Positions 1,009 to 59,933 of a DNA stretch of 64,000 nucleotides are shown one piece after another. The notes beneath the pieces are model-generated. The model saw nothing but the letters and a program-made list of their open reading frames with translations. It was not told the DNA's origin and did not search any database. Positions within the stretch are counted from its first letter, which is position 1; each line of letters opens with the position of its first letter. The DNA is taken from the IMG/VR virus record IMGVR_UViG_3300042308_001511, positions 62,001 through 126,000 of that record; one strand, given 5' to 3'. A program made the translations under genes and the position numbers.

Positions 1009-1571
1009 ATTATCTCGTTTATTTTTTTGTTTCTTACATATGCCTTAGTCCACTCTTCAAGACTCAACACACCGAAGTCTGGATCCTCCACGTTGTGCTC
1101 ACTACGTACAGGTGATCTAGGCAGCAAAGTAGCATACCTATTTTCCTGGTGTCGTATGTATTTGTCATAGTTTATACAATAACCTTTGTCGGTATTGTTG
1201 TTTTTGTCAGTATCCAATAAAAACTCTAAAACAAATACATCACACGGAATACTCCTAATAAGACGTACATACTCTACAAACGGATAGTCATCTATCAGAT
1301 TGTGTATCATAAGACCTTCAACAAATACAAAAGTGTTAGGTTCCTTCTCTACGAGTTCACGGACTAATGTCAATCTTTTTGAGTCCTCAACTATGTCGGT
1401 TGAAAGAGTGAATTTCCACGTGAACTTCGAGTCAGGATATGGCATAACCTTCTGAACTTCTCTATGTGTGAGAAGAATAGATTGGTAGCCAGAGGTTTCA
1501 AGTCTCTTAGTCATCTCGATAAAAAAATAGGTCTGACTATTTGTGTCAAGCTTTATTAGTGTGTTCGGCAT
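1005..1571 (-). CDS. hypothetical protein with C-terminal RxxxIxxI motif
   Basis: 188 aa, ends YVRNKKINEII; AAAC-N18-TATAAT-N4-ATG upstream. Confidence 0.7.
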   Translation of the reverse strand: MPNTLIKLDTNSQTYFFIEMTKRLETSGYQSILLTHREVQKVMPYPDSKFTWKFTLSTDIVEDSKRLTLVRELVEKEPNTFVFVEGLMIHNLIDDYPFVEYVRLIRSIPCDVFVLEFLLDTDKNNNTDKGYCINYDKYIRHQENRYATLLPRSPVRSEHNVEDPDFGVLSLEEWTKAYVRNKKINEII

Positions 1572-1603
1572 GACTATTATAAAGAGTAATCAACGGTAAG
1601 TTT

Positions 1604-2389
1604 TTAGTAGGGACAATACGGAATCCACTTTTCTTCAAACCAGAAAGTTCTTCCGGTGCTATCCTTTACCCCAACTCCTTTTTGGTAGAATACCCACTCA
1701 GAAAAGTCTTTTACATCACCACCGTTAGGATTATGCCAGTCTCTGAGTTGACCTCCATTATATTTGTATGCTTGTAATGGAATATCACAACACATATCGA
1801 GTATGTCTGGTCTTTTGTTTATAACATCTCTGGCTTTATCGAACGGATTTTCACCTAAGTAATAAAGTATAGTCGAACGAAGATAGTTGCCAATTCCATT
1901 AAAGTATTTCTGATCCAACAACGCCTCACAGATTGGTTTGTCGAATACCTTTTTGTGTAGGTTATTTAGTACATTTTCTTTAAAAACATCAAATTCTTTA
2001 GTCGGATCGGGACCTCTTTTTGTCGCAAATCCACCTACTTTATATTTAGGACCCATATAAGATCCATAAAGAAGTAATGAATATCCATCATCTGTATCGA
2101 GTCGGAAACGAACGAACCTGGTATCGTTCCACTTATCGGTAGTAACGAAAGCCCAGTTACCGGACATACCCATAAAAACGTGTACGTTTATCGATTTGTT
2201 CTCACTGTGTAGTCCTATTATAAGTTCTTTACCGAATGATTCCGCACTAACTATAAAGTCACCTTCTATGATGTTTGATTGTGTTGGTATATTACCTTTG
2301 GTAACGTCATATACCGTAGTGTATTTTCGTTTTTGAGACTTCGAGTTAATGAAGTCTGACATAATTTTCAATTCTGCTAATTCTGGCAT
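1604..2389 (-). CDS. nei: Fpg/Nei-family DNA glycosylase/AP lyase, NEIL1-like
   Basis: N-terminal MPE catalytic motif, GKEL, MGMSG, H2TH motif LLDQKYFNGIGNYLRS, and zincless-finger-type GRTFWF with no 4-Cys finger. Confidence 0.9.
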   Translation of the reverse strand: MPELAELKIMSDFINSKSQKRKYTTVYDVTKGNIPTQSNIIEGDFIVSAESFGKELIIGLHSENKSINVHVFMGMSGNWAFVTTDKWNDTRFVRFRLDTDDGYSLLLYGSYMGPKYKVGGFATKRGPDPTKEFDVFKENVLNNLHKKVFDKPICEALLDQKYFNGIGNYLRSTILYYLGENPFDKARDVINKRPDILDMCCDIPLQAYKYNGGQLRDWHNPNGGDVKDFSEWVFYQKGVGVKDSTGRTFWFEEKWIPYCPY

Positions 2390-2433
2390 GAAATAATCTA
2401 TTAGATTATTTATATACTATAATTAGAATCTGT

Positions 2434-3069
2434 TTAGAACTTATAGTTTTTTGTAGGTTTTCTACACTTCACTTGACTTTTTATATTGTTTAGCTCGGTG
2501 TTTCCAATCTCTAACCTTGCATTTTTTCTTTTTAGTACCAACCCTTCAACCATATCTATTTTAGTTATTTCATCATACTTATCTTTGAATTTATTAAGGT
2601 ATGATTTAACCCGGTATACATTTTCTGATACTGAGTAAAGGTATTCGTGTTCTGATGAATTTACACCAAACATTTCGTCAAGTATGTTAGATCTTTGTTC
2701 AAACGTTTTTGTTATTAGGTAGTCACCATCATTTACGAGTATATCGAATATAACCAGTTTGTGATTGAATGTTTTTCCAGTTCCGTCTCTTTTTGATTTA
2801 TTCATATACTCTCCGTTTATTACGGTCCAACCACCAGTGCCTTTATACAATTTTAGTATTTCTTCACTAGGTATCTCGAATTTCGTAAGAGGTTGTGAGT
2901 GTCTATTCATAACCTTTATATTCTTACCATCTGTAAATATTAAACAATTTGAACCATCCAATTTAGGTTGTCCAAACATTGTGTTGTTATCATATGAGTT
3001 CAAATCCAAAGAAGGTATTGCATTCTTCGGTCTTGGAGGATAGATGTATCTATATACTGGATATTTCAT
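2434..3069 (-). CDS. minimal ATP-dependent ligase (nucleotidyltransferase domain only)
   Basis: Motif I QPKLDG, III NGEY, IIIa FDIL, IV EGLVLK, V VKCRK; no OB domain. Confidence 0.8.
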   Translation of the reverse strand: MKYPVYRYIYPPRPKNAIPSLDLNSYDNNTMFGQPKLDGSNCLIFTDGKNIKVMNRHSQPLTKFEIPSEEILKLYKGTGGWTVINGEYMNKSKRDGTGKTFNHKLVIFDILVNDGDYLITKTFEQRSNILDEMFGVNSSEHEYLYSVSENVYRVKSYLNKFKDKYDEITKIDMVEGLVLKRKNARLEIGNTELNNIKSQVKCRKPTKNYKF

Positions 3070-3102
3070 TTGTCTGTTTTTGACAAATGTAAGGAAATTT
3101 TC

Positions 3103-3903
3103 TTATAGATTTATATAAATATGTTTTTCTAAACGTTCTATCAACTCACCTTTTCCGATACTTTTTGGACCTGCTGTATTATTGTGTTCCCATTCTATCG
3201 AATCTATCGCCGATATTAATTTGGGTAAATCTATTTTAGATTTTATAAAATAATGTGATTGTTCTGATTTGTTATCGACTTCTAAGTAGTGTCTACCGGC
3301 ATAAAACCCAACTCTTCTGAATGCAAAGTCGGCTTCTGATTTATTTACAAATTCAAATAGATTGCTAGACTTTTTATAAACCTTTAATTCTCTAAGATAA
3401 TCTAATCTGTTCCATATTTGGAAAACACAAGGTACTTTATATACGTTTCCTTCCAATGTGAAAGAATCATCTGGAAGATCCATCTCGTATATTAAATGAT
3501 ACTCTAATGGTATTTTGTTTTTTATAGTGTCTTTTTTGAAAGACTTTGGAAGTATGAATGCTATAGTTTCTGCACCAATATCTGCAGCTTTTTTCAAAAA
3601 CTTAAGTGCCAGAGTTCCCTGATTACCGAAAGGTGGATTACCGACAACGAGTATTTTACCTGATAAATCCGAAGGATCAAATTCTAACCAATTTTGTTTT
3701 TTGACTCGTTTTGATTCTGGTGCAATATCAAATGATAATAGGTTTGTGTGATTTATCTTTTCTGTGAATGCACCACCTCCGGCAGATGGCTCTATAACGA
3801 CGTCAAAATTATTAAGTTCGATTTTAGAAAGAACATCTAATACGGTTTTTTCTTTTGTGTAGAATTTATCGTTCTCATTTCTTTTGTTACGGTTGTATGC
3901 CAT
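3103..3903 (-). CDS. N6-adenine/N4-cytosine DNA methyltransferase
   Basis: EPSAGGG SAM-binding motif and GNPPF catalytic motif. Confidence 0.85.
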   Translation of the reverse strand: MAYNRNKRNENDKFYTKEKTVLDVLSKIELNNFDVVIEPSAGGGAFTEKINHTNLLSFDIAPESKRVKKQNWLEFDPSDLSGKILVVGNPPFGNQGTLALKFLKKAADIGAETIAFILPKSFKKDTIKNKIPLEYHLIYEMDLPDDSFTLEGNVYKVPCVFQIWNRLDYLRELKVYKKSSNLFEFVNKSEADFAFRRVGFYAGRHYLEVDNKSEQSHYFIKSKIDLPKLISAIDSIEWEHNNTAGPKSIGKGELIERLEKHIYINL

Positions 3904-3965
3904 CTATATTATAGATATATATTCACCAATTTGTTTAGATAAAATAACAAACATTAAATTACTTT

Positions 3966-4159: not shown

Positions 4160-4351
4160 TCAGAAAGGTAAGTCGTTTTCGATAGGTTTGAAAATACCAC
4201 ATTTAGACTTCAAATGACAATCAATCTTATTGACCTCATCCATATACTGTTGTGCCTTCCAGTCGTCCATCATTCTCAATAAGTCAACCATTTGTTGATC
4301 ATCAATTGGTCTTTCTAATAAATCGTATGCTATGTTATCAATGTTTGTCAT
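4160..4351 (-). CDS. hypothetical protein
   Basis: 63 aa; TATATTCG box upstream. Confidence 0.5.
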   Translation of the reverse strand: MTNIDNIAYDLLERPIDDQQMVDLLRMMDDWKAQQYMDEVNKIDCHLKSKCGIFKPIENDLPF

Positions 4352-4407
4352 ATCTTTTTCTTTTTACGAATATACGGAACTTTGTATTTCTTTTTAATAT
4401 AAAGTGC

Positions 4408-5025
4408 ATGAGAATTGAGGATTTTTTTGTCGAGGTAAAATCTCCTATATCCTGCCATAGTGGTGGAGCAGAAGGAGCAGACACTGAGTTTGAACTCGGA
4501 TGTGTCAATATGGGAATACCTGTTTATGCATACTCCTGGAAGACGGAAAGACATAAATCACCCAACAAAGTAGAGATTTCATTAGATGATTTCAGAGAAG
4601 GATCTGAAAAAGTTAAGTCTGCTGCAAAAAGTATTGGAAGAAAAGGTGTAGAAAGACACATAAATCTTTTGGCACGTAACTGGGCACAGGTTAAATATTC
4701 TATGCAAGTCTTTGCAGTATCAACTATAGTTGCACCAGGGCATACTGAACCGAAAGGTCGAGTATCCACCGCTAAGAAAGAAATTGTTGCAGGTGGGACA
4801 GGATATGCTGTGGAGATGGCAATATTACACGAAAGAGAAGTATATGTGTTTGATCAGGTAAAGTGTGAATGGTTTGTGTGGTCTTATTCTTCTGAACGCT
4901 TCGTTCCATCTAAAGAACCATTAGTAACCAAACCATTTGCAGGAATTGGTTCTCGGCAGTTAACTCTGGAAGGAACCGAAGCCATAAAATCATTGTTAAA
5001 AAGGAGCTTCAGTTCTACTAAATAG
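4408..5025 (+). CDS. SLOG/DprA-like nucleotide-binding fold protein
   Basis: HSGGAEGAD and GGTGYAV motifs; start reassigned to ATG 4408 after TATAAA-N4. Confidence 0.6.
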   Translation: MRIEDFFVEVKSPISCHSGGAEGADTEFELGCVNMGIPVYAYSWKTERHKSPNKVEISLDDFREGSEKVKSAAKSIGRKGVERHINLLARNWAQVKYSMQVFAVSTIVAPGHTEPKGRVSTAKKEIVAGGTGYAVEMAILHEREVYVFDQVKCEWFVWSYSSERFVPSKEPLVTKPFAGIGSRQLTLEGTEAIKSLLKRSFSSTK

Positions 5026-5028: not shown

Positions 5029-5880
5029 ATGGCAACATTAGTAATATATTCAAACAAAGCATACGAACATATGGTCGACTCATTTTTGGCGTCTAGGTCA
5101 TATGCTGATGCAGAGTCTCATACCGTCGTTTTTTATATGATAGGTTATGATTCCGATATAGAATACCCAAATTTGGTCAAACGTAGGTGGGATCCACCGG
5201 TCGAAAGACAAAACTTTCAATTCTACAAACCACACATAATGTTACAATCATTAGAGTTTGAAGGTGATCTTATATACTTTGACACCGATATACTAATTGG
5301 TAAAAGGTTCAATCCCTCAAAACTGACTACTGAAAAGGATTACCCTATAGCATGTGCGGGTCCTCTAAACTTTGTTTACTATTGGGAGATGCACCAAGAT
5401 GGAACTACCTCACAGTATGACGAATCTATGCTTAAGGAATATCTTGGTGTAAGTGATAGAACAACACACTACCTTTGGACTTCTATGTTGTGTTACAATT
5501 CTTCGTGTAGAGACTTCTTACAGGAGTGGTGTTCTATCGTTGATAATAGTTATTTTCACCGAGACGGAAAGTCCAGACACTATTTCCCATTTGGAGATGA
5601 AACTGCGTTTAACGTTCTTATATGGAAAAGAGGCTACACAGATTTTCTACCAAGATATTTCGTTAACACAACGGTATTCGAAACATTGGTTGAAGTAGAA
5701 AGTGATGACTCCTACAATTACTACCTCGATAACACATTCAATAATCATACTCCACTCTATGAGATATATGAGAGATGTGACGATTCGAGTATTGTTCAGT
5801 TCTACCACGGTATAAAAGATCCAGGTCAAATAATAAAGGTGATGTCTTGGATGATTGTAAACAAAAAATCCTTATATTAG
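5029..5880 (+). CDS. GT-A-fold glycosyltransferase-like protein
   Basis: KP motif, YFDTD (DxD), GDETAFN and C-terminal FYHG, as in GT8/GT77-like enzymes. Confidence 0.6.
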   Translation: MATLVIYSNKAYEHMVDSFLASRSYADAESHTVVFYMIGYDSDIEYPNLVKRRWDPPVERQNFQFYKPHIMLQSLEFEGDLIYFDTDILIGKRFNPSKLTTEKDYPIACAGPLNFVYYWEMHQDGTTSQYDESMLKEYLGVSDRTTHYLWTSMLCYNSSCRDFLQEWCSIVDNSYFHRDGKSRHYFPFGDETAFNVLIWKRGYTDFLPRYFVNTTVFETLVEVESDDSYNYYLDNTFNNHTPLYEIYERCDDSSIVQFYHGIKDPGQIIKVMSWMIVNKKSLY

Positions 5881-5884
5881 CAGT

Positions 5885-7222
5885 ATGGTAAAAGTAGTAG
5901 AAATTGTAAAGATAACAAGACTGGTTCCGGTTTATAAGGACGGTCAAGAAGCGAACTCAATCTCGGTTGCTAAGTTCGAGTTTGCTGATGGAGGTGAATG
6001 TGGGTTCAATGTAATCGCACAGAAAGGTTTGTATGAGATTGGTTCTAAGGCCGTTTACATACAACCAGATTATTGTTTGTCTGATAATGAATTGTTTTCC
6101 AGTTTTATTGCACCTGGTGGTGAACCGAAAAAAAGTAGACTTGGAAAACAAAACAGAATACGTGCAATCAAATTTAACTTCCAATTTGAAGGAAGTAGTG
6201 ATCCAATTTATTCAAATGGTATTCTTATGCCACTTTCAGAAGTAGAAGATTTTCTAAATAATTCGGATCCTGAAAACTATTGTTTTTATAGTGATTTACC
6301 TTCACCGAATGCTTATTCTAAAATAGAAGATATAGAAGATTTGGCAGAGAAACTCGGTGTTACAAAATATGAAGAACCGGAAAGTGCGGGGTCAGGATTG
6401 GCTGCTGGTGAATTCCCTTCATTTATGTATAAAACGGATGAACCGAATGCGCTCAATTTAGTTTCACATATCAAACGTGTAATTGAGGAAGGACAAGAAC
6501 TTGGTATAACAATCAAAAGAGATGGTTCTTCACATACAACATACTTCAAATTAAAAGATGATGAGTGGAAAGTTGGTGTTTGTTCACGTTCTATGGAAAA
6601 GAAGATGGAACAATTACAAACAACTGGATACGTTTCATCAGAGGGTTTAGAGTATAGAAAACACTTTGATCGTGATACTATGACGAAAGGTTGGTTCTGT
6701 GAGACGAACGGTGAGTTTATTACTGATAATATCGCAGAGGAGACACTAACACCTATACAGAAAGAGGTGAAAGACTCCTGGGTAGAACTGGCTAAAAACT
6801 CAGGATTACTCGATAAAGGACTCGAATATTGTAAAGAGTATGGTGTTCAACTAGCATTCCGTGGAGAGATTATAGGACAGGGATTGAAAGGATCAGGAAA
6901 CAAAGTGAATCCAGATGCAAACGAAAAACAAAAACTCGTTCTTTTCGGAATTGATGATTTATCTGAGGGATATTCTAAGAGAATCAACTACTCTTCTCCA
7001 CACAATTTGAGATATGTTGCAAATCTTCTTGGTGTTGAATACACACAGGCACACATCGCGAAGTTTCCGACTTACGAGGCATTGTGTGAATATTGTGAAG
7101 GTATATTTGTGAAAGAGAAAGCAGAAGGAAGAATCATCGAAGGTGTCGTAATACGAACGATGTATACCAACGATTTATCTTGCAAATATATGAACGCGGA
7201 GTATGACAGTCTTAAGAAGTAG
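5885..7222 (+). CDS. RNA ligase, DRB0094/Rnl5-like family
   Basis: N-terminal OB-like domain, KRDGSS (motif I), VCSR, FRGEI, EGVVIR, CKYMNAEY. Confidence 0.85.
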   Translation: MVKVVEIVKITRLVPVYKDGQEANSISVAKFEFADGGECGFNVIAQKGLYEIGSKAVYIQPDYCLSDNELFSSFIAPGGEPKKSRLGKQNRIRAIKFNFQFEGSSDPIYSNGILMPLSEVEDFLNNSDPENYCFYSDLPSPNAYSKIEDIEDLAEKLGVTKYEEPESAGSGLAAGEFPSFMYKTDEPNALNLVSHIKRVIEEGQELGITIKRDGSSHTTYFKLKDDEWKVGVCSRSMEKKMEQLQTTGYVSSEGLEYRKHFDRDTMTKGWFCETNGEFITDNIAEETLTPIQKEVKDSWVELAKNSGLLDKGLEYCKEYGVQLAFRGEIIGQGLKGSGNKVNPDANEKQKLVLFGIDDLSEGYSKRINYSSPHNLRYVANLLGVEYTQAHIAKFPTYEALCEYCEGIFVKEKAEGRIIEGVVIRTMYTNDLSCKYMNAEYDSLKK

Positions 7223-7477: not shown

Positions 7478-7499
7478 TTATTATAACTATATTAGCAAT

Positions 7500-7922
7500 A
7501 TGGAAAAAAACTTATACATAGTGAGGGGATTGCCAGGATCCGGTAAGTCAACACTGGCATTATCTTTGGTGTATCACGATTTCCTCGTTTGTGAAGCAGA
7601 TAAATACTTCATTGATAAAGAGACTGGTGAGTACAAGTTCGATGCGAAGTTCATAAAGAACGCACACGATTTTTGTAGAAACACCGTCGAACAATATATG
7701 AAAGATAATCAGGTGAATGATCAATTCTACACCAGGATTGCAGTTTCCAACACATTCACTCAGGAGTGGGAGATGGAGCCATACTTTGAACTTGCTAAGA
7801 AATATGGATACAGGGTTTTTTCAATTGTAGTTGAGAACAGACACGGTGGAAAAGACATACATAATGTTCCGCAAGCAGCATTAGATGCTATGGAGAATAG
7901 ATTTCAGCTTAAGTTGATATGA
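7500..7922 (+). CDS. AAA_33/N4BP2-like P-loop kinase (putative polynucleotide kinase)
   Basis: RGLPGSGKST Walker A, EADKYF, VSNTFTQEWE, HNVP; start moved to ATG 7500. Confidence 0.8.
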   Translation: MEKNLYIVRGLPGSGKSTLALSLVYHDFLVCEADKYFIDKETGEYKFDAKFIKNAHDFCRNTVEQYMKDNQVNDQFYTRIAVSNTFTQEWEMEPYFELAKKYGYRVFSIVVENRHGGKDIHNVPQAALDAMENRFQLKLI

Positions 7923-12390: not shown

Positions 12391-13257
12391 TTAATTTTTT
12401 TCGTTTATGGACATTATTACCTTTATCGTCAACTTGTTTCCTAGCACACTACTTATTGTACAAGACTCAGTCATCTCTAGCTTGACTTCTGGATACTCGT
12501 CCTGTGTTCGCTGGCATGCTATGTATATCTCCTCTACGAAGTCAGTCCTTTTTTTGAAGTCCTCGTATAAATTCTCGGGTTTTGTGTACGTGACTGATCT
12601 CATACCGTCGTTCACCCACTCGCCGGTTTTTATAGTGAAATTGTAAATGACGGACTTCTTGTAAATAGTTGGTCGGTAATCTCTCGTTACATCGAAACGA
12701 TCTTCTATCTCTGCATCGGACATAAGGTCAGCAAAGGCCATCTCCTGTGGTAGGTAGTCACCATTGGTGAAGTTGGTGAACTTCTCGTCAAATTTCTTTA
12801 TTCTCATAACGTATATATTATTTTGTTTTGATATACTTTCGAATGTCATTATTCTTTCCATAGTGACTCTCGGTTCGACAAAGACGAAGTCCTGTGTACC
12901 TGATTGTACAATTTCCAGTTTGGCACCTGGTTGATTCGGATCTTCCATACAGTACATCAGAGGTCCCCAAGGTCCTTTCACCTTTCCAATCTCGTTACAT
13001 ATCTGCATAAACTCATGCACTATTGGTTCGATACCTTCCAGTTCACCCCAGTTTATTCCAACCATTACCAGTCCATCGCCTTTGTTGTATTGGAACTTCC
13101 TGAGTAGGAACGGTATTACGTTGTATTCCAGGTTGAATCCTTCCAGTTCTCTTTCGAGTGACTCTTGTGTTGCGTTATCCCAGTCTATTAAGGAAACTAT
13201 GGCACCTGTATCTCGTAGTTCCTGTGCTCTTTCGTCTATTTCTTCGATTATGCTCAT
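12391..13257 (-). CDS. putative virion protein(s); probable internal start at 12807
   Basis: In-frame TAATATATA-N4-ATG giving MRIKKFDEKF. Confidence 0.6.
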   Translation of the reverse strand: MSIIEEIDERAQELRDTGAIVSLIDWDNATQESLERELEGFNLEYNVIPFLLRKFQYNKGDGLVMVGINWGELEGIEPIVHEFMQICNEIGKVKGPWGPLMYCMEDPNQPGAKLEIVQSGTQDFVFVEPRVTMERIMTFESISKQNNIYVMRIKKFDEKFTNFTNGDYLPQEMAFADLMSDAEIEDRFDVTRDYRPTIYKKSVIYNFTIKTGEWVNDGMRSVTYTKPENLYEDFKKRTDFVEEIYIACQRTQDEYPEVKLEMTESCTISSVLGNKLTIKVIMSINEKN

Positions 13258-15044: not shown

Positions 15045-15677
15045 TCATTTTACTGGTTTTCCTGCGGTTATTCTGACCTCGTGGATTCTGACCTCGTGGT
15101 TTGGTTTGTCCTTCAGCTCCCTAACCATCTTCGGTATGTATTTCTTTTCGACTTTTGTCCTCTTCCTGGTCCGCTTAATGATTTTGTCCTCTTCCTTGGT
15201 GACGTTCGTCCAGGTAATCTCGAAGATGTTAGTGAGTCCTTGTTCGTTGAGCATTATAGCGATGGACTGTAGCCTTTCGACGAACTCTTCGCCAATCATT
15301 ATGTAGTTGCCTGTTTTGAGGTCATCGAGTGTGTTTATAGGCCTGTGTGGTGGCCTTATTTCCACGTACAGGATGTTGTTCTTGTCAATCTCAATCTTCT
15401 TCTTTATCTCGTCTCCGAACTCCCACAGAAGCTCCTTCACGTATTGTGCTGCTTGTGCGACATCGTCTGTATTATTAATTGATTCCTCTATTGTTTTTTC
15501 AGCTTCTTCTCTTTCTTTTTGCTCCCTATCGAGTTCCTTTAATCTCATCTTCCTTTGGTCTTCGGCGTCCAGATAATTTCTTAAGTTTATATCCTTTGGT
15601 GTTTCGTTCGTGAAATCTTTTGCAAATTCAGGTGCAAAATTGGTGAAGTCGCTTATTATTCTTTTTTTCTTTCTCAT
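15045..15677 (-). CDS. putative virion protein, first gene of a late operon
   Basis: TATATA-N4-ATG; starts MRKKKRIISDFTNF. Confidence 0.6.
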   Translation of the reverse strand: MRKKKRIISDFTNFAPEFAKDFTNETPKDINLRNYLDAEDQRKMRLKELDREQKEREEAEKTIEESINNTDDVAQAAQYVKELLWEFGDEIKKKIEIDKNNILYVEIRPPHRPINTLDDLKTGNYIMIGEEFVERLQSIAIMLNEQGLTNIFEITWTNVTKEEDKIIKRTRKRTKVEKKYIPKMVRELKDKPNHEVRIHEVRITAGKPVK

Positions 15678-15744
15678 GTAGTATATATAAAAATATCATG
15701 TATTTTTCCTATATTTGTTTTATATTTGTTAAAAAAATAAAAAC

Positions 15745-18588: not shown

Positions 18589-18906
18589 TTATTTAGTTTT
18601 TTCAATTAAATCATCATTAGCTTCTTTTGGTGAATTATATTCAATAACATAATTCTTAAGTTTTTTATCTGGTATATAATATAAAATAGTTAATTTCTTT
18701 TTGAAATTACCAACAGGGAATATGGCTATTTCATCATCAGAATTATTTTTGTAATTATGTCTATCATAATTTTCATCATACCCAGTATATTCATACCCGG
18801 CAGCTGTTAAAGTTTTATCTAACTTATCTAATTCCGCTGGTAATTTTGATTTTTTATCTGGTGTTTCATCTGGAGTATACTCTTCAAATAACTTTATGTA
18901 TTTCAT
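18589..18906 (-). CDS. putative head-internal virion protein
   Basis: Starts MKYIKLFEEY; TTTTATATATA upstream. Confidence 0.7.
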   Translation of the reverse strand: MKYIKLFEEYTPDETPDKKSKLPAELDKLDKTLTAAGYEYTGYDENYDRHNYKNNSDDEIAIFPVGNFKKKLTILYYIPDKKLKNYVIEYNSPKEANDDLIEKTK

Positions 18907-19413: not shown

Positions 19414-19423
19414 TATATAGTGA

Positions 19424-41978: not shown

Positions 41979-42230
41979 TTATGTTTTTTTGATAAAAAAT
42001 GATACAATAACAACTATTGAACCCAAAATTGTCCAGATGATATCAAGCCAATCGAATCCCGAACCGTAAAATAGGTCCCAAACCTCCTTAAGTATTGCAA
42101 TTGCAGTACATAATAGGAAAGATGAAAGTGGTGAAACACCAAAAATCAAAGATGTGAGTGTAATCAAAGAACCGTAAATAAAGTGGTTTGCTTTATCTTT
42201 TTCTACCTCGAATTTTTCGAAACTAAACAT
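41979..42230 (-). CDS. small membrane protein
   Basis: DKANHF, KE..D and D motifs with three hydrophobic segments. Confidence 0.65.
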   Translation of the reverse strand: MFSFEKFEVEKDKANHFIYGSLITLTSLIFGVSPLSSFLLCTAIAILKEVWDLFYGSGFDWLDIIWTILGSIVVIVSFFIKKT

Positions 42231-42259
42231 ATAGTTTATATCGAATGTGTTTGGTAAGT

Positions 42260-42553
42260 TTATTTGTTTTGTTTATTATCTTCTCCTTTGAATGGACCTA
42301 ACATACCTTTCAGATTCCAAGATGATACGAATTTTTTGTTATGTTTCTCATAATCTTCATATGATTCGATGCCTGTATCGATTGGGTTTTGAATATATTG
42401 TATGTTAGCACCCTGCTTATTCATATCAGAAATTCTATTTCCAATATCGGTTTTTGCCGATTGTTTCATAACCCTTTTTAGTTTTTCTACTGAATTTTGA
42501 CGTGGTAGTGCCTCGTTCAACATATCAAACTCTTCAAATTTTAATATTCTCAT
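42260..42553 (-). CDS. putative head-internal virion protein
   Basis: TAATATATA-N4-ATG; starts MRILKFEEFDMLNEA. Confidence 0.7.
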   Translation of the reverse strand: MRILKFEEFDMLNEALPRQNSVEKLKRVMKQSAKTDIGNRISDMNKQGANIQYIQNPIDTGIESYEDYEKHNKKFVSSWNLKGMLGPFKGEDNKQNK

Positions 42554-42612
42554 AACCTATATATTAACTTAATCTTATATAAAACCATTACGTTATATAG
42601 AATATAACAGTC

Positions 42613-44565
42613 ATGAGAATTGTATACATAACACCACACCTTTCCACAGGAGGAATGCCAGAATACCTTAGGAGAAAAGTTGAACTACTAAAAGATGACC
42701 ATGATGTGTGGGTGGTCGAGAAAAGTTTTGAACCTGCGTATAGATCGATAAGAGATAAAATAGAGTCTCTTATTGGTGAAAGACTTGTATCTCTAAATGG
42801 TAATAACGAAATTTTACTAAAACTAATTTCCGAGGTAAACCCAGATGTTATACACTTTGAGGAGTTATCCGATTATCACTTTGAACCGGCACTTCTTGAC
42901 CTTATATACACACCTGATCGTGAATATTTAATATTTGATACACTACACGATTCTTCGATAGATTATACCGAGAAAAGGTACATACCTGACAAAATGTTAG
43001 TTGTTAGTCCTTGGCAGGTTAAGAACTTCTTACCGCTCGGTATACCGGTTGAGATGTTAGAACATGAAATTTTAGCAGGTGAAAGAAATCGTGGTTTACT
43101 TTCTGAACTAGGTTTAGATCCTTCCCGTAAGCATATACTTCAGGTTGGTTTATTCTCACGTAGAAAGAATCAATCTGAGACAATAGAATTAGCCAAACTT
43201 ATGCCTGGTGTAGATTTTCACTTTGTTGGAAATCAAACAGACAATTACAGACAATATTGGGAACCTTTGTTGAATAATCTTCCATCTAATTGTAAGATAT
43301 GGGGTGAGAGATCGGATGCTGAAAAATTCTACTCTTGTATGGATTGTGTAATATTTCCATCGAGAGGTGAGTATGGTGACCGGGAGACTAACCCTTTAGT
43401 AATAAGGGAAGCAATGGCTTGGAATGTTCCACTTTTCTTACGTGATAGAGACTTCTATATGGGTATGTATTCGGAGTCTTCAATGGTTAGATTTATGCAC
43501 GAAGAAGTAGAAAAAAATGTGATAGAACTCACAGATTTTATAAAATTAGAAAATAAAGAAATTATGAAAACAGAAAACTTAACAGATGAATTCTTCAAAA
43601 GAAAACTTTTTGAAATATCATTTTCATCGGAAACTAACCAAATAGACTTCAAATATTTAGAACAACCGACACTGGAATGTATGGTTTGTATAAGAGACAT
43701 CGATACAGAGGTGCCAATTTATTCTTTTGATTCTAAATTTGAATCTGGTTCTACCGTTTGGTGTGTTCCTATACCAAAACCATACTACGACTTCCAGGAC
43801 AATCCTAACTTTGGTGGTTTTCTATATGACTTCTACATCGATGGTGAGAGAAAGTATGTTCAGACAACTAGAATAAAACCGGCGTCGATAATCAAAGAAA
43901 AATTCAGAGTCGAATCGTTTGAACCAATATTCGTTAACTACGAACAGTTCTTCACCGACAAAATTTATGACAATTTCCTATTAGGTGGAGAGATAGGAAC
44001 AGTATTAGACATCGGTGCTAACATAGGTCTATTCACAGAACTTGCTATTCGTAAAGGTGCATCTGAGGTTGTTTCAGTAGAGATAAACGAAAATGCAATT
44101 GGTATATTCGAAGATATTCACTCGGGTAGAGAAAATGTAAGACTAGTTAAGAAGGCAGTATACGACAAAACTGGTGAAATGGAAATACACACAGATCCTA
44201 ACAACTCATTAGTGGGTTCGGTTTTTCACGATCACACTGCTGGTTTATCAGAGACAGTTATTGTTCCATCAATAAGTATCGATGATCTTATGGCTGAGTA
44301 TAATTTGGAAGATATTGGTCTTGTTAAGATAGATGTAGAAGGATCAGAATATGCCATATTTGATGGTATGTCTGACGAAACACTTGACAAACTGAATAAT
44401 ATAATACTTGAATTCCACGATAACTTTGGAGGTAGACTTAGAGACTCAATAACAAAAAGATTAGATGGTAAATTTGATTACAAAATATACCAGGACGATT
44501 GTAAAAATCCTGCAAGTGAGTGGGAAGAAAGAGGTACAATATTCGCTAAAAAACATATTAAATAA
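42613..44565 (+). CDS. GT4-type glycosyltransferase fused to FkbM methyltransferase
   Basis: PHLSTGGMP, RKNQ, FPS...E.NPLVIREA; LDIGANIG, KIDVEGSE, EFH. Confidence 0.88.
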   Translation: MRIVYITPHLSTGGMPEYLRRKVELLKDDHDVWVVEKSFEPAYRSIRDKIESLIGERLVSLNGNNEILLKLISEVNPDVIHFEELSDYHFEPALLDLIYTPDREYLIFDTLHDSSIDYTEKRYIPDKMLVVSPWQVKNFLPLGIPVEMLEHEILAGERNRGLLSELGLDPSRKHILQVGLFSRRKNQSETIELAKLMPGVDFHFVGNQTDNYRQYWEPLLNNLPSNCKIWGERSDAEKFYSCMDCVIFPSRGEYGDRETNPLVIREAMAWNVPLFLRDRDFYMGMYSESSMVRFMHEEVEKNVIELTDFIKLENKEIMKTENLTDEFFKRKLFEISFSSETNQIDFKYLEQPTLECMVCIRDIDTEVPIYSFDSKFESGSTVWCVPIPKPYYDFQDNPNFGGFLYDFYIDGERKYVQTTRIKPASIIKEKFRVESFEPIFVNYEQFFTDKIYDNFLLGGEIGTVLDIGANIGLFTELAIRKGASEVVSVEINENAIGIFEDIHSGRENVRLVKKAVYDKTGEMEIHTDPNNSLVGSVFHDHTAGLSETVIVPSISIDDLMAEYNLEDIGLVKIDVEGSEYAIFDGMSDETLDKLNNIILEFHDNFGGRLRDSITKRLDGKFDYKIYQDDCKNPASEWEERGTIFAKKHIK

Positions 44566-49324: not shown

Positions 49325-50530
49325 TTATTGTTTTGTCATTATATTTGGATCTATACCCTTCAATATCAACCTTGCATTCTCTAATCTGTAGGTCTCTTTG
49401 GCAAGTTTCTCCTTAACTATGCCATAAACATCTTTACCCTGTATCAACGCCATAACTGCAGAAAAGTTTTCACTCTTCCTGTATAATTGTGCGTACCTTT
49501 TTCTCATAAGACCTTCTCTCACAGAATTATCCCAATCAAAACCATCTGCCATAGTCTGATAAACTTCGTAGTCACTCATTATAGAATTTACTCTTCTATC
49601 AACCTCTTTAGTAACTGCGGCTATTATCTGCTCTACCCTTATGTGAGACTCTTTATCTTCCTCCGGTATCTGTGCCATAACATCATCTATTTGCTCATCT
49701 AATATGTAAGCTATTAGTCTGTTCTCACGGTAAAGATCGTCTGTTAGAAGTCCGTGTAGTGAAAAATACCAAGCGGTTTTCATCTTCACAAATAATCCAT
49801 CCAAATCCACTACCCATCCTTCCATATCTTCAACGGACTTACACATCTCTACAAGTTCATCAAGAGTATAATCATATTTCACGGCAGTTCTTATAGAACC
49901 TATTTTATCCTTATAGTCGTCCAAGTCTAAATACTCACCAGTTTTGTTGTTTCTAAGTCTAAGTAGTATTAGCTCTTCTTTGGCATACCTAAGTACTATT
50001 CTATTGCTTGGTGCAACATATTCAAATACTGCAACGAGGTCGTTATCAATAGACCAGTCAACAAATTTCTTTATTTCATAGTTATTGTTGTATATAGAAA
50101 GCATTCCTACCGCTTGGTCGGACTCGAATGACATTTTAGACTTAGCAAACACATTTCCGTTTGGTAGTCTTATGAAAGATCCAACAGAACCGTCCTCTTT
50201 AGAATATACAGATTTTACTTTTCTATCTTTTACTAAGGAATATTGTGTTTCTTCAACTTGGTTTAGATTGAAGAATTTGTGAAGTAGTCTGTATGTTTTG
50301 TAATTTCCGTCGTAATCGAAAACATAAACGAGACCTCGCATTTCCCATGCTAAGTTATCGTTGAAATCTTTGTATGATGCCAATCTATAATTGAATATAG
50401 ACACATTATACCCATCTACTATGAGTTTAGCCTCATAGAAAGCAGCATCGAGATACTGGTCTATTTCTGCCACGTATCTTTTGCCGATAGTCATAGCCAC
50501 AGCTTCTTCGTATGTTGGTATTTTATACAT
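49325..50530 (-). CDS. rnlA: T4 Rnl1-like RNA ligase
   Basis: EMRG, KFFNLNQ, KEDGS, FEY..P.NRIV, EGWV, VKMKT.WY..LH. Confidence 0.9.
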   Translation of the reverse strand: MYKIPTYEEAVAMTIGKRYVAEIDQYLDAAFYEAKLIVDGYNVSIFNYRLASYKDFNDNLAWEMRGLVYVFDYDGNYKTYRLLHKFFNLNQVEETQYSLVKDRKVKSVYSKEDGSVGSFIRLPNGNVFAKSKMSFESDQAVGMLSIYNNNYEIKKFVDWSIDNDLVAVFEYVAPSNRIVLRYAKEELILLRLRNNKTGEYLDLDDYKDKIGSIRTAVKYDYTLDELVEMCKSVEDMEGWVVDLDGLFVKMKTAWYFSLHGLLTDDLYRENRLIAYILDEQIDDVMAQIPEEDKESHIRVEQIIAAVTKEVDRRVNSIMSDYEVYQTMADGFDWDNSVREGLMRKRYAQLYRKSENFSAVMALIQGKDVYGIVKEKLAKETYRLENARLILKGIDPNIMTKQ

Positions 50531-50560
50531 AATGCAAATATAATAAATAATATATAAAGA

Positions 50561-51205
50561 ATGAAACATTTAGACACATTTCAACTTTTTAATGAGAAAA
50601 TGGTGCTTGATAATTATGATGAGTATGCCAAATTAGTAGCGGATGCCTACGAAGCAGCACCAGAATATGATGAAACAATGATATCATCATATAAATCTCT
50701 TATAAATCACGCAGTTAATAAACTATATCCACAAATAATTGGTATGGGTATTGATATACAATTTGTTGACTATGATCCATATAGTAGTAGAAATGATATG
50801 GCAGAAGATGTTGAAAAGAATAAGCTACTAAGAATAAGTTCATTATTCAACGAACATCCTGGTATTGATAAAAAGATATTTACCAAAGAAGATAATTTGA
50901 AATTTAGAGCTGTACACGATTGGTATACACATATAATATGTAATCAAGATTTTGGTCTAAAAGGAGAACTAAAGGCATATAATACACACGCCACATTGGC
51001 ACCACCCGATGCACTTCCTGCACTATTTACCGAAGTAGTCGGACAAGCTTGTTATGCAATTGATAGAGGTAGTGTTGGTGAAAATGGTGATTTTATACCT
51101 GGATTCGGTGGGCAAAAGTTTGCCAGATTGAATGGATTTGATTATGGAAATGTTGGTATTGTTTCTGGATATGATATTTCGGGTAAAAAACTTTTCAAAA
51201 AATAA
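50561..51205 (+). CDS. putative head-internal virion protein with HDxxxH motif
   Basis: TAATATATA-N4-ATG; starts MKHLDTFQLFNE; FRAVHDWYTH...GE..AY..H...TEVVGQ. Confidence 0.65.
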   Translation: MKHLDTFQLFNEKMVLDNYDEYAKLVADAYEAAPEYDETMISSYKSLINHAVNKLYPQIIGMGIDIQFVDYDPYSSRNDMAEDVEKNKLLRISSLFNEHPGIDKKIFTKEDNLKFRAVHDWYTHIICNQDFGLKGELKAYNTHATLAPPDALPALFTEVVGQACYAIDRGSVGENGDFIPGFGGQKFARLNGFDYGNVGIVSGYDISGKKLFKK

Positions 51206-51233: not shown

Positions 51234-51266
51234 AACTATATTTGTAGAAACTAAAATAAATAAGGT

Positions 51267-51593
51267 ATGCAAACAGTAGATATTTTTGAGAAGTTCAAAG
51301 AATTTTTAGGTAAGGGTCAATATGTAAAAGATGTTTTCCCTGAGATTTTGGAAAAACACAAAGCCGCTGATATTACTTCCGGATTGGCGGACAAATTAGA
51401 TGGTATTTCAGATCCGTTCGAAAGATTAGTGGTGGGTGTTCATGCAGTTGACCAGTTGGATACTGGGGCGACGAGTGAGGTGAAAGCATTGTCGGATCGT
51501 CACGAACCTTTACTTAGAATCTCTTTATATTTCAACTCTGGACGTGATGAAATGGCAAAAAAATACTTCGAAAAATATTTGGCACAGTTCTAA
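51267..51593 (+). CDS. hypothetical protein
   Basis: TATATTTG box upstream. Confidence 0.65.
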   Translation: MQTVDIFEKFKEFLGKGQYVKDVFPEILEKHKAADITSGLADKLDGISDPFERLVVGVHAVDQLDTGATSEVKALSDRHEPLLRISLYFNSGRDEMAKKYFEKYLAQF

Positions 51594-58384: not shown

Positions 58385-58638
58385 TACACACGTCAATCCC
58401 CAACTTGAAGCCGTCTAATACATTCGTGTTTTCTGTCGGCAACATACCTGCCAAAAGGAAGAAGTGGTGGCAGTTCTGGAGGAAGAAAGGAGACTCAGCA
58501 GAGGAGCAGATGGAGAAGCTTGTAAAATCGTACTCGGCCTTCAACTTTAACCGATATCTCCGTAAGGCGAAGGCGTGCGAGCTCTGGGGCATACACAGAC
58601 CTGACTGGGAGAAAGAACTCTGGTTTCCAAATAAATAG
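58381..58638 (+). CDS. hypothetical protein
   Basis: [12 protein letters not shown] motif. Confidence 0.55.
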
Positions 58639-58658
58639 AAAAAAATTCACATAAAGAA

Positions 58659-59705
58659 ATGAGTAAGGACTATTACAGCACACTCGGCGTAAATAAAGGC
58701 GCCACAGAAGAAGAAATAAAGAAAGCTTACAGAAAACTTTCTAAGAAATATCACCCGGATATAAATAAAGATGCCGGTGCAGAAGATAAATTTAAAGAGG
58801 TCTCCGAAGCGTATGAGACACTCTCAGATTCTGGTAAGAGGTCAAACTATGACCGTTTCGGAACCGCAGATCCACGAGGTGGTGGTAACCCGTTTGGTGG
58901 TGGCCATGGATTCAATATGGATGATATCTTCTCTCAGTTCGGGGATATGTTTGGTGGAGGTTCTTTCGGTGGTAGACAGATGAGGAAGAAAGGCTCTGAT
59001 TTAAGAATAAAGGTTGTTCTGAACATAGATGAAATTCTGAACGGATGTACTAAAACATTGAAATATAAAAAGAAAACATCGTGTAGTTCTTGTAATGGAC
59101 AAGGTGGTCATGATGTTAGAACATGTCTAACGTGTAATGGTGCAGGTCAAAGAATTGTTCTACAAAATACTCCATTTGGACAAATTAGGACACAATCAAC
59201 CTGTCCGGATTGTAGTGGTTCTGGTCAACAAATAAGTAGAAAGTGTGGATATTGTCATGGTGAGGGTACAACACTGATTGATAGTACTGTAAATGTGGAT
59301 ATACCTGCAGGTGTGGCAGAAGGTGCACAAATGGGACTACAGGGTTATGGTAACGAGATTAGTGGTGGAATTTCGGGTGACCTTTATATAACTATTGAGG
59401 AAAAACCGGATTCTAGCTATCGTAGAGAAGGAAACAATATAATTGTTGATAAAGAAATTTCAATTGTTGATGCGATATGTGGAGCTAGTGTTAATGTAAG
59501 TACACCTCGTGGAGATTTGAATATAAATATATCTGCAGGTACCGATCATGGACACCTAATAAGGATGAGTGGGAAGGGAATTCCTGATATGAACAGAGGT
59601 TTAGGTGACCTTTACGTTAAGATATTGGTGAAAATACCTAAGAACGTATCTCTCGATGAGAGACATGCGATTGAGAAACTCAGAGAGATGAATTGTTTCA
59701 AATAA
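58659..59705 (+). CDS. dnaJ: class A J-domain chaperone DnaJ
   Basis: HPD motif, G/F region, four CxxCxGxG repeats, C-terminal domain. Confidence 0.96.
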
Positions 59706-59734
59706 AAAATGCCGTGTAATACACGGCATTTTTT
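59704..59734. terminator. bidirectional intrinsic terminator
   Basis: AAAAATGCCGTGT-aat-ACACGGCATTTTT. Confidence 0.88.
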
Positions 59735-59737
59735 ATA

Positions 59738-59908
59738 TCAATATTGTAATTTATGTTTTTCTTTTCTGGTATAAGTCTTTGTAGATTTATGCACACGGTG
59801 ATGACATTGGCGAAGTCCTGATGCGATTTCCAAATCTCTGGATACAGAACGTTCTATTCTAAGAACTTCTTCTTGTGCTATACTCATTATGTGTCTTTCC
59901 TTTCTCAT
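59738..59908 (-). CDS. small basic protein
   Basis: TATATTAG-N4-ATG; HRVHKS.K.Y.RK.KHK. Confidence 0.6.
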   Translation of the reverse strand: MRKERHIMSIAQEEVLRIERSVSRDLEIASGLRQCHHRVHKSTKTYTRKEKHKLQY

Positions 59909-59933
59909 ACTGCTAATATAAGTAAAAAAAAAA

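What the first reader, a model, noticed from the sequence alone, without database searches (positions are those of the whole stretch)
1569..59920. Promoter-like box exactly 4 nt before ATG at about 19 genes: widespread leaderless transcripts
Seen in sequence: TATATT[AT]G-N4-ATG at 5885, 7500, 19927, 50530(-), 59908(-); TATATA-N4-ATG at 12807(-), 15677(-), 19424, 28218(-), 28704, 29610, 42553(-), 50561; TATAA[TAC]-N4-ATG at 1571(-), 3903(-), 4408, 30568, 42230(-), 42613. No Shine-Dalgarno sequences. Established: the Bacteroidota -7 box places the start site a few nt downstream. Inference: transcription begins at or next to the A of ATG, so many mRNAs of all three classes would be leaderless. 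This could free the phage from host initiation control or mRNA-leader cleavage. Alternative: the boxes act as translation enhancers.
Basis: partly seen in the sequence, partly recalled or inferred. Interest (0 to 1): 0.7.

Follow-up and report, generated by a model that had tools for sequence, protein, structure and literature searches.

The report
Phage promoter boxes abutting start codons
A 344-kb freshwater phage of Bacteroidota places its two promoter boxes either 4 bases or about 20 bases before the ATG. So about half of its predicted transcripts probably start at the start codon with no leader, which is rare in the host phylum; no RNA data were available to confirm it.

Summary
The third subgroup, TATAA[TAC]-N4, is not enriched as a class.

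The boxes behave as promoters, not translation signals:
- They are almost always intergenic.
- They sit at first genes of transcription units.
- Box-to-ATG distances come in only two ranges: 4 (to 7) nt, or about 19-23 nt before an A-rich leader. Distances of 8-18 nt are near background.
- In the leadered copies, the 5th base after TATATA is A in 38 of 44. In the N4 copies that position is the A of ATG.
- This matches the published Bacteroidota -7 element geometry (-12 to -5, 4-5 nt to the start site).
- A huge-phage relative (53% protein identity) has the same consensus and the same two spacings.

The likely host is a freshwater member of the Flavobacteriales. No Shine-Dalgarno signal is present. 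No RNA run was listed, so start sites remain inferred. I predict about 65 leaderless or near-leaderless units out of about 131.

The parts
12805..12820 (-). Class A box plus start codon (TAATATATA-N4-ATG). It lies inside a longer 288-aa frame, so it may be an internal start.
15675..15690 (-). Class A box plus start codon (TTATATATA-N4-ATG), 210-aa gene with a divergent upstream neighbour.
19411..19426 (+). Class A box plus start codon (TAATATATA-N4-ATG), 168-aa gene.
28216..28231 (-). Class A box plus start codon, 511-aa protein with a laminin-G/ConA-like domain; divergent upstream neighbour.
28691..28706 (+). Class A box plus start codon, 287-aa FMN-reductase-like protein.
29597..29612 (+). 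Class A box plus start codon, 147-aa MgtC-family protein.
42551..42566 (-). Class A box plus start codon, 97-aa gene; 59-nt divergent spacer shared with the gene at 42613.
50548..50563 (+). Class A box plus start codon, 214-aa gene; back-to-back with the class B box at 50528-50544 in a 30-nt spacer.
5871..5887 (+). Class B box plus start codon (CTTATATTAGCAGT-ATG), 445-aa RNA ligase.
7486..7502 (+). Class B box plus start codon, 140-aa AAA_33 kinase-like protein.
19913..19929 (+). Class B box plus start codon (TATATTTG-N4-ATG), 81-aa gene; the box lies in the 3' end of the preceding gene.
50528..50544 (-). Class B box plus start codon (TATATTTG-N4-ATG), 401-aa T4 Rnl1-like RNA ligase.
59906..59922 (-). 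Class B box plus start codon, identical 14-mer to the one at 5871-5887; opens a 56-aa ORF.
1569..1584 (-). TATAAT-N4-ATG, 188-aa gene; weak-variant or chance site.
3901..3916 (-). TATAAT-N4-ATG, 266-aa gene; weak-variant or chance site.
4395..4410 (+). TATAAA-N4-ATG; weak-variant or chance site.
30555..30570 (+). TATAAT-N4-ATG, 194-aa gene; weak-variant or chance site.
42228..42243 (-). TATAAA-N4-ATG, 83-aa gene; weak-variant or chance site.
42600..42615 (+). AATATAAC-N4-ATG, 650-aa glycosyltransferase/methyltransferase. This is a plausible degenerate class A box, because the gene is divergent from 42553 with only a 59-nt spacer.
2387..2419 (-). Class A box with leader (TATATA-N21-ATG).
18904..18938 (-). 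Class A box with leader (TTATATATA-N23-ATG).
22702..22735 (-). Class A box with leader (TAATATATA-N22-ATG).
22994..23030 (+). Class A box with leader (TTATATATA-N25-ATG), 750-aa gene. Its orthologue in LR745206.1 has the N4 form.
39362..39392 (-). Class A box with leader (N19), directly after a terminator-like hairpin; 630-aa gene. The leadered form is conserved in the orthologue.
4349..4376 (-). Class B box with leader (TATATTCGTA-A-rich-ATG).
22910..22940 (-). Class B box with leader (CTTATATTAGCA-A-rich-ATG).
51235..51269 (+). Class B box with leader (TATATTTGTAGAAA...ATG).

Best explanation
The window belongs to a 344-kb phage whose likely host is a freshwater member of the Flavobacteriales (Bacteroidota). 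The phage has two families of -10/-7-type promoter boxes:
- Class A: (T/A)T(A/T)A-TATATA, with no detectable upstream -33/-35 element.
- Class B: TATATT-N-(G/A)-(C/T)-A, which resembles the host sigma-A -7 element TAnnTTTG.

Read as 8-mers, both occupy -12..-5 relative to a start site 5 nt after the box. That is the published geometry of Bacteroidota promoters.

Each box family is used in two discrete layouts:
- Leaderless layout: the start-site nucleotide is the A of the ATG (box-N4-ATG; a minority at N5-N7). The mRNA then has no leader, or at most 1-3 nt, and would be translated by the leaderless route, which recognises a 5'-terminal AUG.
- Leadered layout: the start site is followed by an A-rich, G-poor leader of about 15-19 nt (class A) or about 11-14 nt (class B), as in ordinary SD-less Bacteroidota mRNAs.

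Genome-wide I count about 65 short-type units (50 A, 15 B) and about 66 leadered units (44 A, 22 B).

Shown: the motifs, their spacing statistics, their location and their conservation.
Inferred: that RNA polymerase starts at the fifth nucleotide after the box; which sigma factor reads class A; and that ribosomes initiate on these 5'-AUG ends.
For: 1. Spacing peaks far above chance.

2. The extended box T[AT]ATATATA occurs 94 times. Of the 64 copies not at N4, 56 are intergenic, although only about 8% of the genome is intergenic.

3. The distance from TATATA to the next called start is bimodal. Counts are 35, 11, 10, 6 at 4-7 nt; near background at 8-18 nt; 7, 11, 10, 13, 7 at 19-23 nt; and only two copies in total at 0-3 nt (one at 1, one at 3). 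TATATT peaks at 6 nt (15) and at 17-20 nt.

4. In the 44 leadered class A copies aligned on the box, the 5th nucleotide after TATATA is A in 38 of 44. The three nucleotides just after the box are unconstrained, and an A-rich run begins there. In the N4 copies this position is the A of ATG.

5. Genes with the box are first in their units. The upstream neighbour is divergent in 57% (N4) and 45% (leadered) of cases, against 16% of genes without a box (Fisher P 3e-7). The upstream gap is 5 nt or less in 2/35 against 150/359 (P 6e-6).

6. Divergent gene pairs with only 23-43 nt between their ATGs carry one box next to each ATG, which leaves no room for leaders.

7. Terminator-like hairpins abut the box in several cases.

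8. In 200 kb of the huge phage LR745206.1 (53% identity in a 1052-aa protein), the same consensus TTAATATATAnnnT-ATG and the same two spacings are found. Among 59 reciprocal best hits, the box is present in both genomes for 13 of the 17 that have it in either (Fisher 2e-9). The layout is the same in 11 of those 13.

9. Published geometry: in Flavobacterium johnsoniae the -7 element is T-12 A-11 T-8 T-7 T-6 G-5, with 4 or 5 nt to the start site (PMC6847099). In F. psychrophilum it lies at -12 to -5 (PMC9723704).

10. The host phylum is Bacteroidota. The phage AdoHcyase is 85% identical to those of freshwater Flavobacteriales MAGs, and nearly all 80 best loci are Bacteroidota. Relatives infect Prevotella, Tenacibaculum, Chryseobacterium and Flavobacterium.

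11. There is no SD signal, and E. coli-type -35/-10 promoters are not enriched.
Against: - There is no direct 5'-end evidence. No RNA run was listed for this phage.
- My gene calls are home-made. I took the first ATG of each frame, with a few starts re-set to box-coupled ATGs, which adds some circularity for those 8 genes.
- Class A departs from the host consensus at two positions that are nearly invariant in hosts (A instead of T at -7, A instead of G at -5). Its reader is unknown, so the host geometry may not transfer to it.
- In class B, a conserved (C/T)A at -4/-3 could itself be the start site. That would give a 3-nt leader. It would also explain why class B leaders look about 4 nt shorter than class A leaders.
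- 15 class A genes have N5-N7 spacing.
- TATATA is a palindrome, so a few 'leadered' calls in tight divergent spacers are shadows of the neighbour's box.
- 121 of the 210 genes with at least 40 nt of upstream spacer have no exact box.
Confidence: 0.7

Rival explanations
1. The boxes are promoters, but the start site is a few nucleotides away from the A of ATG. For example, in class B it could be the conserved A at -3; in class A it could be at -1 or +2. The transcripts would then carry 1-5-nt pseudo-leaders, or would need another start codon, rather than a true 5'-AUG.
For: Class B keeps (C/T)A at -4/-3 in both layouts. If that A is the start site, class B leaders become 14-17 nt, close to class A's 15-19 nt. 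15 class A genes have N5-N7 spacing. Published host spacing is '4 or 5 nt', not a single value (PMC6847099).
Against: The sharp N4 and N6 peaks, with only two copies in total at N0-N3, fit selection for a 5'-terminal AUG better than for a fixed short leader. In leadered class A copies the conserved A is exactly at the N4 position. The ATGs are the first ATG of their frames, and orthologue alignments begin at residue 1.
Confidence: 0.17
2. The box acts at the RNA level. It would be a translation enhancer, or the operator of a phage RNA-binding repressor (as T4 RegA binds AU-rich sites overlapping start codons), or a processing site, on transcripts that start further upstream.
For: The position relative to the AUG is fixed. 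The sequence is AU-rich, in a phylum whose translation initiation depends on A-rich unstructured upstream sequence (PMC6847099).
Against: The box is almost absent before internal genes of co-directional runs (2/35 with a gap of 5 nt or less, against 150/359). It is concentrated at divergent junctions. The same box recurs 19-23 nt upstream of other genes, where it cannot contact the start codon. In 23-43-nt divergent spacers there is no upstream room for another promoter outside the neighbouring gene. The geometry equals that of host promoters.
Confidence: 0.07
3. The box is the DNA site of a phage regulator (repressor or activator) that overlaps promoters, and not the polymerase-recognition element itself.
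For: The TATATA core is palindromic and strictly invariant; single mismatches are rare. That is stricter than most -10 elements. No -33/-35 partner is seen.
Against: The flanks are asymmetric: T-rich upstream, unconstrained for three nucleotides and then A downstream. This argues against a symmetric dimer site. About 94 class A (TATATA-core) sites at nearly every identifiable unit start would be unusual for a regulator, and no other promoter-like element accompanies them.
Confidence: 0.05
4. The pattern is a by-product of AT-rich composition and the A/T-rich context of start codons.
For: The genome is 35.6% GC, and the region upstream of starts is A-rich. The TATAA[TAC] subgroup is indeed at background.
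Against: Shuffles and the spacing histograms reject this for the two main classes. The signal is also conserved in a relative whose proteins are only 30-60% identical.
Confidence: 0.01

Closest known systems
Leaderless genes marked by a TANNNT box about 12 nt before the start codon (Actinobacteria, Deinococcus-Thermus; Zheng et al. 2011, PMC3160421). The classic phage case, from my own knowledge and not checked here, is lambda cI from PRM.
   Same: A -10-type box lies at a fixed short distance from the start codon, there is no SD, and the start codon would be the 5' end of the mRNA. In class B the first T of TATATT is at -12, as in that survey.
   Different: The host phylum here is Bacteroidota, where measured leaderless fractions are only 3.7-5.5% (PMC7366714, PMC9723704). 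The phage has about 50% of its predicted units in this layout. The class A box is longer and stricter (TAATATATA). The same box is also used with a quantised leader of about 17 nt.
Bacteroidota primary sigma factor promoter: -7 element TAnnTTTG (TAHHTTTG) with a weak -33 TTTG.
   Same: The 8-mer occupies -12..-5, with 4-5 nt to the start site (PMC6847099, PMC9723704). Class B (TATATT-T/A/C-G/A) fits the consensus. The -33 element is weak or absent, as also reported for F. johnsoniae.
   Different: Class A has A at -7 and A at -5 and usually A or T at -12, so it differs at positions that are nearly invariant in host promoters. Generic TAnnTTTG other than TATATT-type shows no positional relation to phage gene starts.
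T4 late promoters (TATAAATA at -10, no -35, read by gp55 with gp33 and the sliding clamp). This comparison rests on my own knowledge.
   Same: An AT-rich 8-9-bp single-element promoter without an upstream element, used many times in a large phage genome.
   Different: T4 late mRNAs have SD-containing leaders. The only sigma gene I found here is ECF-like, with regions 2 and 4, and is not shown to be gp55-like. Class A also drives non-late genes such as ribonucleotide reductase.
phiKZ early promoters read by a virion RNA polymerase.
   Same: A jumbo phage with a conserved AT-rich promoter element (PMC8244752).
   Different: phiKZ has its own multisubunit polymerases, and dRNA-seq found no leaderless transcripts; its 5' UTRs are mostly 31-40 nt (PMC8244752). 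Pfam models found no beta/beta' or T7-like polymerase in this phage.

Membership tests
Leaderless mRNA genes | The transcription start site coincides with the first nucleotide of the start codon (or the 5' UTR is at most a few nt). | not testable with these tools
   No RNA run was listed. DNA contigs carry no 5'-end information. The only evidence is indirect: the conserved A at the 5th nt after the box in leadered copies and the host geometry (PMC6847099).
Leaderless mRNA genes | A -10-type promoter box at a fixed distance of about 10-12 nt upstream of the start codon. | tested here: met
   TATATA at -10..-5 in 35 called genes and TATATT at -12..-7 in 15, both far above other spacings.
Leaderless mRNA genes | AUG start codon and no Shine-Dalgarno sequence. 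| tested here: met
   Coupling is to ATG only, not GTG or TTG. The SD core is depleted genome-wide. SD absence is phylum-wide, so it does not discriminate.
Bacteroidota sigma-A promoter (-7 TAnnTTTG / -33 TTTG) | T-12, A-11, T-8, T-7, T-6, G-5 nearly invariant. | tested here: inconclusive
   Class B has T-12 A-11 T-8 T-7 fixed by the search pattern, T at -6 in 8/16 and G at -5 in 9/16, so it is compatible. Class A has A at -7 and A at -5, both invariant, and A or T at -12, so this feature is not met for class A.
Bacteroidota sigma-A promoter (-7 TAnnTTTG / -33 TTTG) | 4-5 nt between the 8-mer and the start site. | tested here: inconclusive
   The 8-mer ends 4 nt before the ATG in short copies, and 4 nt before a conserved A (38/44) in leadered class A copies. 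This is consistent, but no start site was measured.
Bacteroidota sigma-A promoter (-7 TAnnTTTG / -33 TTTG) | TTTG element near -33. | tested here: not met
   No information above background at -30..-40 in class A. Class B shows only a T-rich/TTTGT stretch directly upstream of the box. The element is also weak in F. johnsoniae (PMC6847099).
T4-type late promoter system | A gp55-like sigma factor (region-2-only) with co-activator and clamp dependence. | not tested
   The only sigma-family gene found has regions 2 and 4_2, i.e. it is ECF-like. No search for gp55 or gp33 homologues was made.
phiKZ-type phage-encoded multisubunit RNA polymerase transcription | Phage genes for beta/beta'-like subunits. 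| tested here: not met
   No match to RNA_pol_Rpb2_6 or RNA_pol_Rpb1_1 in the 344-kb record, although the controls matched. The giant proteins carry collagen, lectin or propeller domains. Very divergent polymerases could escape Pfam.

The most novel reading that the evidence does not exclude
The phage uses a promoter grammar of its own (TAATATATA, read by host polymerase redirected by a phage factor). This grammar hard-wires each transcription unit to one of two translation-initiation routes: a 5'-AUG leaderless mRNA or an A-rich leader of about 17 nt. By changing the ribosome or initiation-factor state of the infected cell, the phage could then switch whole gene sets on or off at the level of translation. 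The leaderless layout would be a recent invention of this subclade of huge Bacteroidota phages, because more distant relatives seem to keep only the leadered layout.
Probability: 0.15. Interest if true: 0.8.

Novelty: new variant of a known kind. Interest (0 to 1): 0.55.

Why it matters
Bacteroidota do not use Shine-Dalgarno pairing, and how their ribosomes pick start codons is still an open question. In the hosts, leaderless mRNAs are a small minority (3.7-5.5%).

If about half of a phage's transcription units are leaderless, that would show the route is efficient in this phylum. It would also give a natural paired set for testing what each route needs: the same box with either no leader or a leader of about 17 nt.

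Practically, the two boxes and their spacing rule give a way to call gene starts and transcription units in this uncultivated huge-phage clade. They also offer compact promoter and start cassettes for Flavobacteriia.

Tried and rejected
- RNA evidence: a search for RNA runs listed none. The 'any' search gave only DNA runs from lakes and rivers.
- Microdiversity: I laid contigs of four DNA runs on 26100-31900. No listed substitution or indel fell in a box or its spacer. But the strains differ by only about 1% and 257 variants were not shown, so this is uninformative.
- Close relatives in IMG/VR: a search with the CCA-adding enzyme as a single query found none.
- Phage polymerase: Pfam models for beta, beta' and T7-type polymerases were negative. 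The giant proteins are collagen, lectin or propeller proteins.
- 'AGAGA at -29' looked like a third promoter class. It is the coding 3' end of a paralogous gene family.
- Generic TAnnTTTG shows no positional signal apart from the TATATT-type.
- E. coli-type -35/-10 promoters are not enriched.
- More distant relatives: sampled stretches of PTm1, PAU, Lak-A1, LR756500, LR756501 and LR756504 show no N4 peak. LR756501 and LR756504 show only a hint of TATATA at about -28. These were 50-100-kb samples near the structural genes, so absence is not shown. For Lak-A1 only, I let ORFs run through TAG in that script, relying on my memory of published recoding. The code-independent histogram was negative as well.
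- PHROGs and Pfam left most box-coupled genes unannotated, so temporal class could not be inferred.
- Rfam found nothing in the window.

Full report
**What the window is.** The 64-kb window is bases 62001-126000 of a 344,083-bp IMG/VR virus record, 35.6% GC and estimated 91% complete.
- A conserved 1052-aa protein is 53% identical to those of the metagenomic huge phages LR745206.1 and LR756502.1. It is more distantly related to proteins of LR756501 (735 kb), the Lak phages of Prevotella, Tenacibaculum phages PTm1/PTm5, Sphingomonas phage PAU, and Chryseobacterium and Flavobacterium phages.
- The phage's S-adenosylhomocysteine hydrolase is 85% identical to those of freshwater Flavobacteriales MAGs. 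Nearly all of the 80 best genomic loci are Bacteroidota.
- DNA runs holding the sequence come from lakes and rivers.
- So the host is very probably a freshwater member of the Flavobacteriales. This matters because Bacteroidota have an unusual promoter (-7 TAnnTTTG) and no Shine-Dalgarno use.

**Checking the observation.** All 19 sites are present as described.

| Pattern | Window count | Window shuffles | Genome count | Genome background |
|---|---|---|---|---|
| TATATA-N4-ATG | 8 | 1.9 +/- 1.6 | 46 | 10.2 at other spacings, Poisson P about 2e-16 |

- 35 of the 46 N4 ATGs open frames of at least 60 aa, against 1-2 for spacings 0-3. GTG and TTG show no coupling.
Single-mismatch variants of TATATA are rare at -10..-5.
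- So 13 of the 19 sites are robust and 6 are doubtful.
- Upstream regions are A-rich and G-poor. SD cores occur before 22 of 468 genes, against 62 in control windows.

**Two motif classes.** I anchored on my own gene calls (468 genes, 91.7% coding).
- Class A has the consensus (A/T)-T-(A/T)-A-TATATA-NNN-T-ATG-A, with no information further upstream.
- Class B is TATATT-(T/A/C)-(G/A)-(C/T)-A-(A/G)-T-ATG, often preceded by an A-tract and TC-C.

**The key new result: the same boxes occur at a second, discrete distance.**
- The extended class A box T[AT]ATATATA occurs 94 times. Of the 64 copies not followed by N4-ATG, 56 are intergenic, in a genome that is only about 8% intergenic. Most of them lie 17-25 nt before a called start.
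- The distance from TATATA to the next gene start is bimodal. Counts are 35, 11, 10, 6 at 4, 5, 6, 7 nt; about background at 8-18 nt; 7, 11, 10, 13, 7 at 19-23 nt; and only two copies in total at 0-3 nt.
- TATATT peaks at 6 nt (15) and at 17-20 nt. In the leadered copies it continues as TATATT(T/C)GTA(G/A)AAA.
- I aligned the 44 leadered class A copies on the box. The three nucleotides after it are unconstrained. The fourth is never C. The fifth is A in 38 of 44, and an A-rich run begins there.
- In the N4 copies, that fifth nucleotide is the A of the ATG. This is what one expects if transcription starts there in both layouts.

**Promoter or RNA signal?**
- Genes with the box are first genes of units. 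The upstream neighbour is divergent for 57% (N4), 47% (N5-7) and 45% (leadered), against 16% of genes without a box (Fisher 3e-7).
- Only 2 of 35 N4 genes sit within 5 nt of a co-directional upstream gene, against 150 of 359 box-less genes (P 6e-6).
- Of 54 divergent gene pairs, 42 carry a recognised box. Pairs whose ATGs are only 23-43 nt apart have one box beside each ATG, for example window 50530(-)/50561(+) with a 30-nt spacer.
- Terminator-like hairpins run straight into the box in several cases.
- A translational enhancer or operator would be needed at internal genes too, and could not act from 20 nt upstream. The data therefore favour a promoter.

**Geometry.**
- In F. johnsoniae the -7 element is T-12 A-11 T-8 T-7 T-6 G-5, with 4 or 5 nt to the start site (PMC6847099). 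In F. psychrophilum the box lies at -12 to -5 (PMC9723704).
- Read as 8-mers, both class A ((A/T)ATATATA) and class B (TATATTNR) end at -5 relative to the A of ATG. That is exactly this geometry.
- Class B fits the host consensus. Class A differs at -7 and -5, and generic TAnnTTTG shows no positional signal. Class A may therefore need a phage factor.
- The phage encodes one sigma-70-family protein with regions 2 and 4_2, i.e. ECF-like (genome 14784-15395). Pfam models find no beta/beta' or T7-type polymerase. Which factor reads class A is unknown.

**Conservation.**
- In 200 kb of LR745206.1 (29% GC), TATATA-N4-ATG counts 30 against about 9 at other spacings. The consensus is the same, TTAATATATA-NNN-T-ATG, and so is the bimodal distance distribution.
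- Among 59 reciprocal best hits (24-62% identity), 17 have a box in one genome or the other, and 13 have it in both (Fisher 2e-9).
- The layout is kept in 11 of those 13 (6 leadered, 5 short) and switched in 2. Alignments mostly begin at residue 1, which supports the start codons.
- Sampled stretches of more distant relatives show no N4 peak. LR756501 and LR756504 show a hint of TATATA near -28. So the leaderless layout may be specific to this subclade, but the sampling was partial.

**Inventory and gene content.**
- Genome-wide I count 50 class A short units (35 at N4, 15 at N5-7), 44 class A leadered, 15 class B short and 22 class B leadered. That is about half of the recognised units and 14% of genes.
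- In hosts, 5' UTRs shorter than 10 nt make up 3.7% in B. thetaiotaomicron, and leaderless mRNAs make up 5.5% in F. psychrophilum (PMC7366714, PMC9723704). phiKZ has none (PMC8244752).
- Annotated short-type genes include two RNA ligases, a kinase-like ATPase, a polynucleotide kinase, a CCA-adding enzyme, an FMN reductase-like protein, an MgtC-family protein and a glycosyltransferase/methyltransferase.
- The neck protein, its structural-module neighbour (g006, unannotated) and ribonucleotide reductase use the leadered class A form.
- The claim that all three temporal classes are leaderless could not be tested.

**Limits.**
- No RNA run was listed, so every statement about start sites is inference.
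- For class B, the conserved (C/T)A at -4/-3 might be the start site, which would give a 3-nt leader. That would also remove the unexplained roughly 4-nt difference in leader length between class B and class A.
- The gene calls are mine. Eight starts were moved to box-coupled ATGs.
- 121 of the 210 genes with at least 40 nt of upstream spacer have no exact box, so other or degenerate promoters exist.
- Microdiversity from DNA contigs was uninformative.

**Verdict.** The finding is real, and its main reading is probably right. The signal is a pair of phage promoter boxes used in two quantised layouts, one of which puts the start site on the ATG. The mechanism itself is known from lambda cI, actinobacteria and Deinococcus (PMC3160421). 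Its scale in a Bacteroidota phage, the phage-specific class A box and the strict two-state leader length are new. Confidence is 0.7 that the N4/N6 units give mRNAs with leaders of 0-3 nt.

Noticed in passing
genome 286-339 kb (minus strand) and 196-203 kb (plus strand), outside the window; also uncalled ORFs at L004:13600-14530: At least 45 small genes (46-213 aa, about 10% of all genes) end in the same C-terminal peptide, R-(E/D)-x-(K/R)-(L/I)-x-(E/K)-(L/I)-G-(I/L). The stop codon often overlaps the next ATG (ATGA). Ten members gave no Pfam hit. This family produced a spurious 'AGAGA at -29' peak upstream of gene starts.
   Followed up: partly
L004:14784-15392 (+), with neighbours L004:11546-13423, 15462-16025 and L005:1048-2358: The phage encodes an ECF-like sigma factor (regions 2 and 4_2). 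It sits in a plus-strand block headed by a class B leadered promoter, together with an NAD-dependent DNA ligase, a ClpP protease and an AdoHcyase that is 85% identical to those of freshwater Flavobacteriales.
   Followed up: partly
window 5885-7922 and 49325-50530; L014:4497-5669; L018:8759-9988: There is a full RNA-repair set: two RNA ligases, a kinase-like ATPase, a polynucleotide kinase and a CCA-adding enzyme, all with short-type boxes. Yet ARAGORN finds no tRNA gene anywhere in the 344 kb, which is unusual for a phage of this size.
   Followed up: partly
window 12391-13257 (-): A perfect class A box plus ATG (ATAATATATACGTT-ATG at 12807) lies 150 codons inside a 288-aa frame whose own start overlaps the upstream gene (ATGA). 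This could be an internal leaderless start producing a 138-aa C-terminal isoform.
   Followed up: no
genome-wide, leadered boxes (e.g. window 4349-4376, 22910-22940, 51235-51269 compared with 18904-18938, 22702-22735): If both classes start 5 nt after the 8-mer, class B leaders (about 11-14 nt) are about 4 nt shorter than class A leaders (about 15-19 nt). This is unexplained. It may mean that class B starts at the conserved A of (T/C)GTA.
   Followed up: partly
L005:5299-13425 (-); window 59934-63998 (-): Two giant proteins. One is 2709 aa with 10 matched stretches of collagen triple-helix repeat. The other is 1376 aa with DUF5122 beta-propeller repeats, two laminin-G/ConA-like domains and Lcl C-terminal domains. 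They are probably fibres or adhesins.
   Followed up: no
window 28704-30053 (+): Two adjacent auxiliary genes: an FMN-reductase/flavodoxin-like protein and an MgtC-family membrane protein. Each has its own class A short-type box.
   Followed up: no
window 5871-5887 (+) and 59906-59922 (-): An identical 17-nt class B cassette (CTTATATTAGCAGTATG) heads both the RNA ligase gene and a 56-aa ORF 54 kb away.
   Followed up: no
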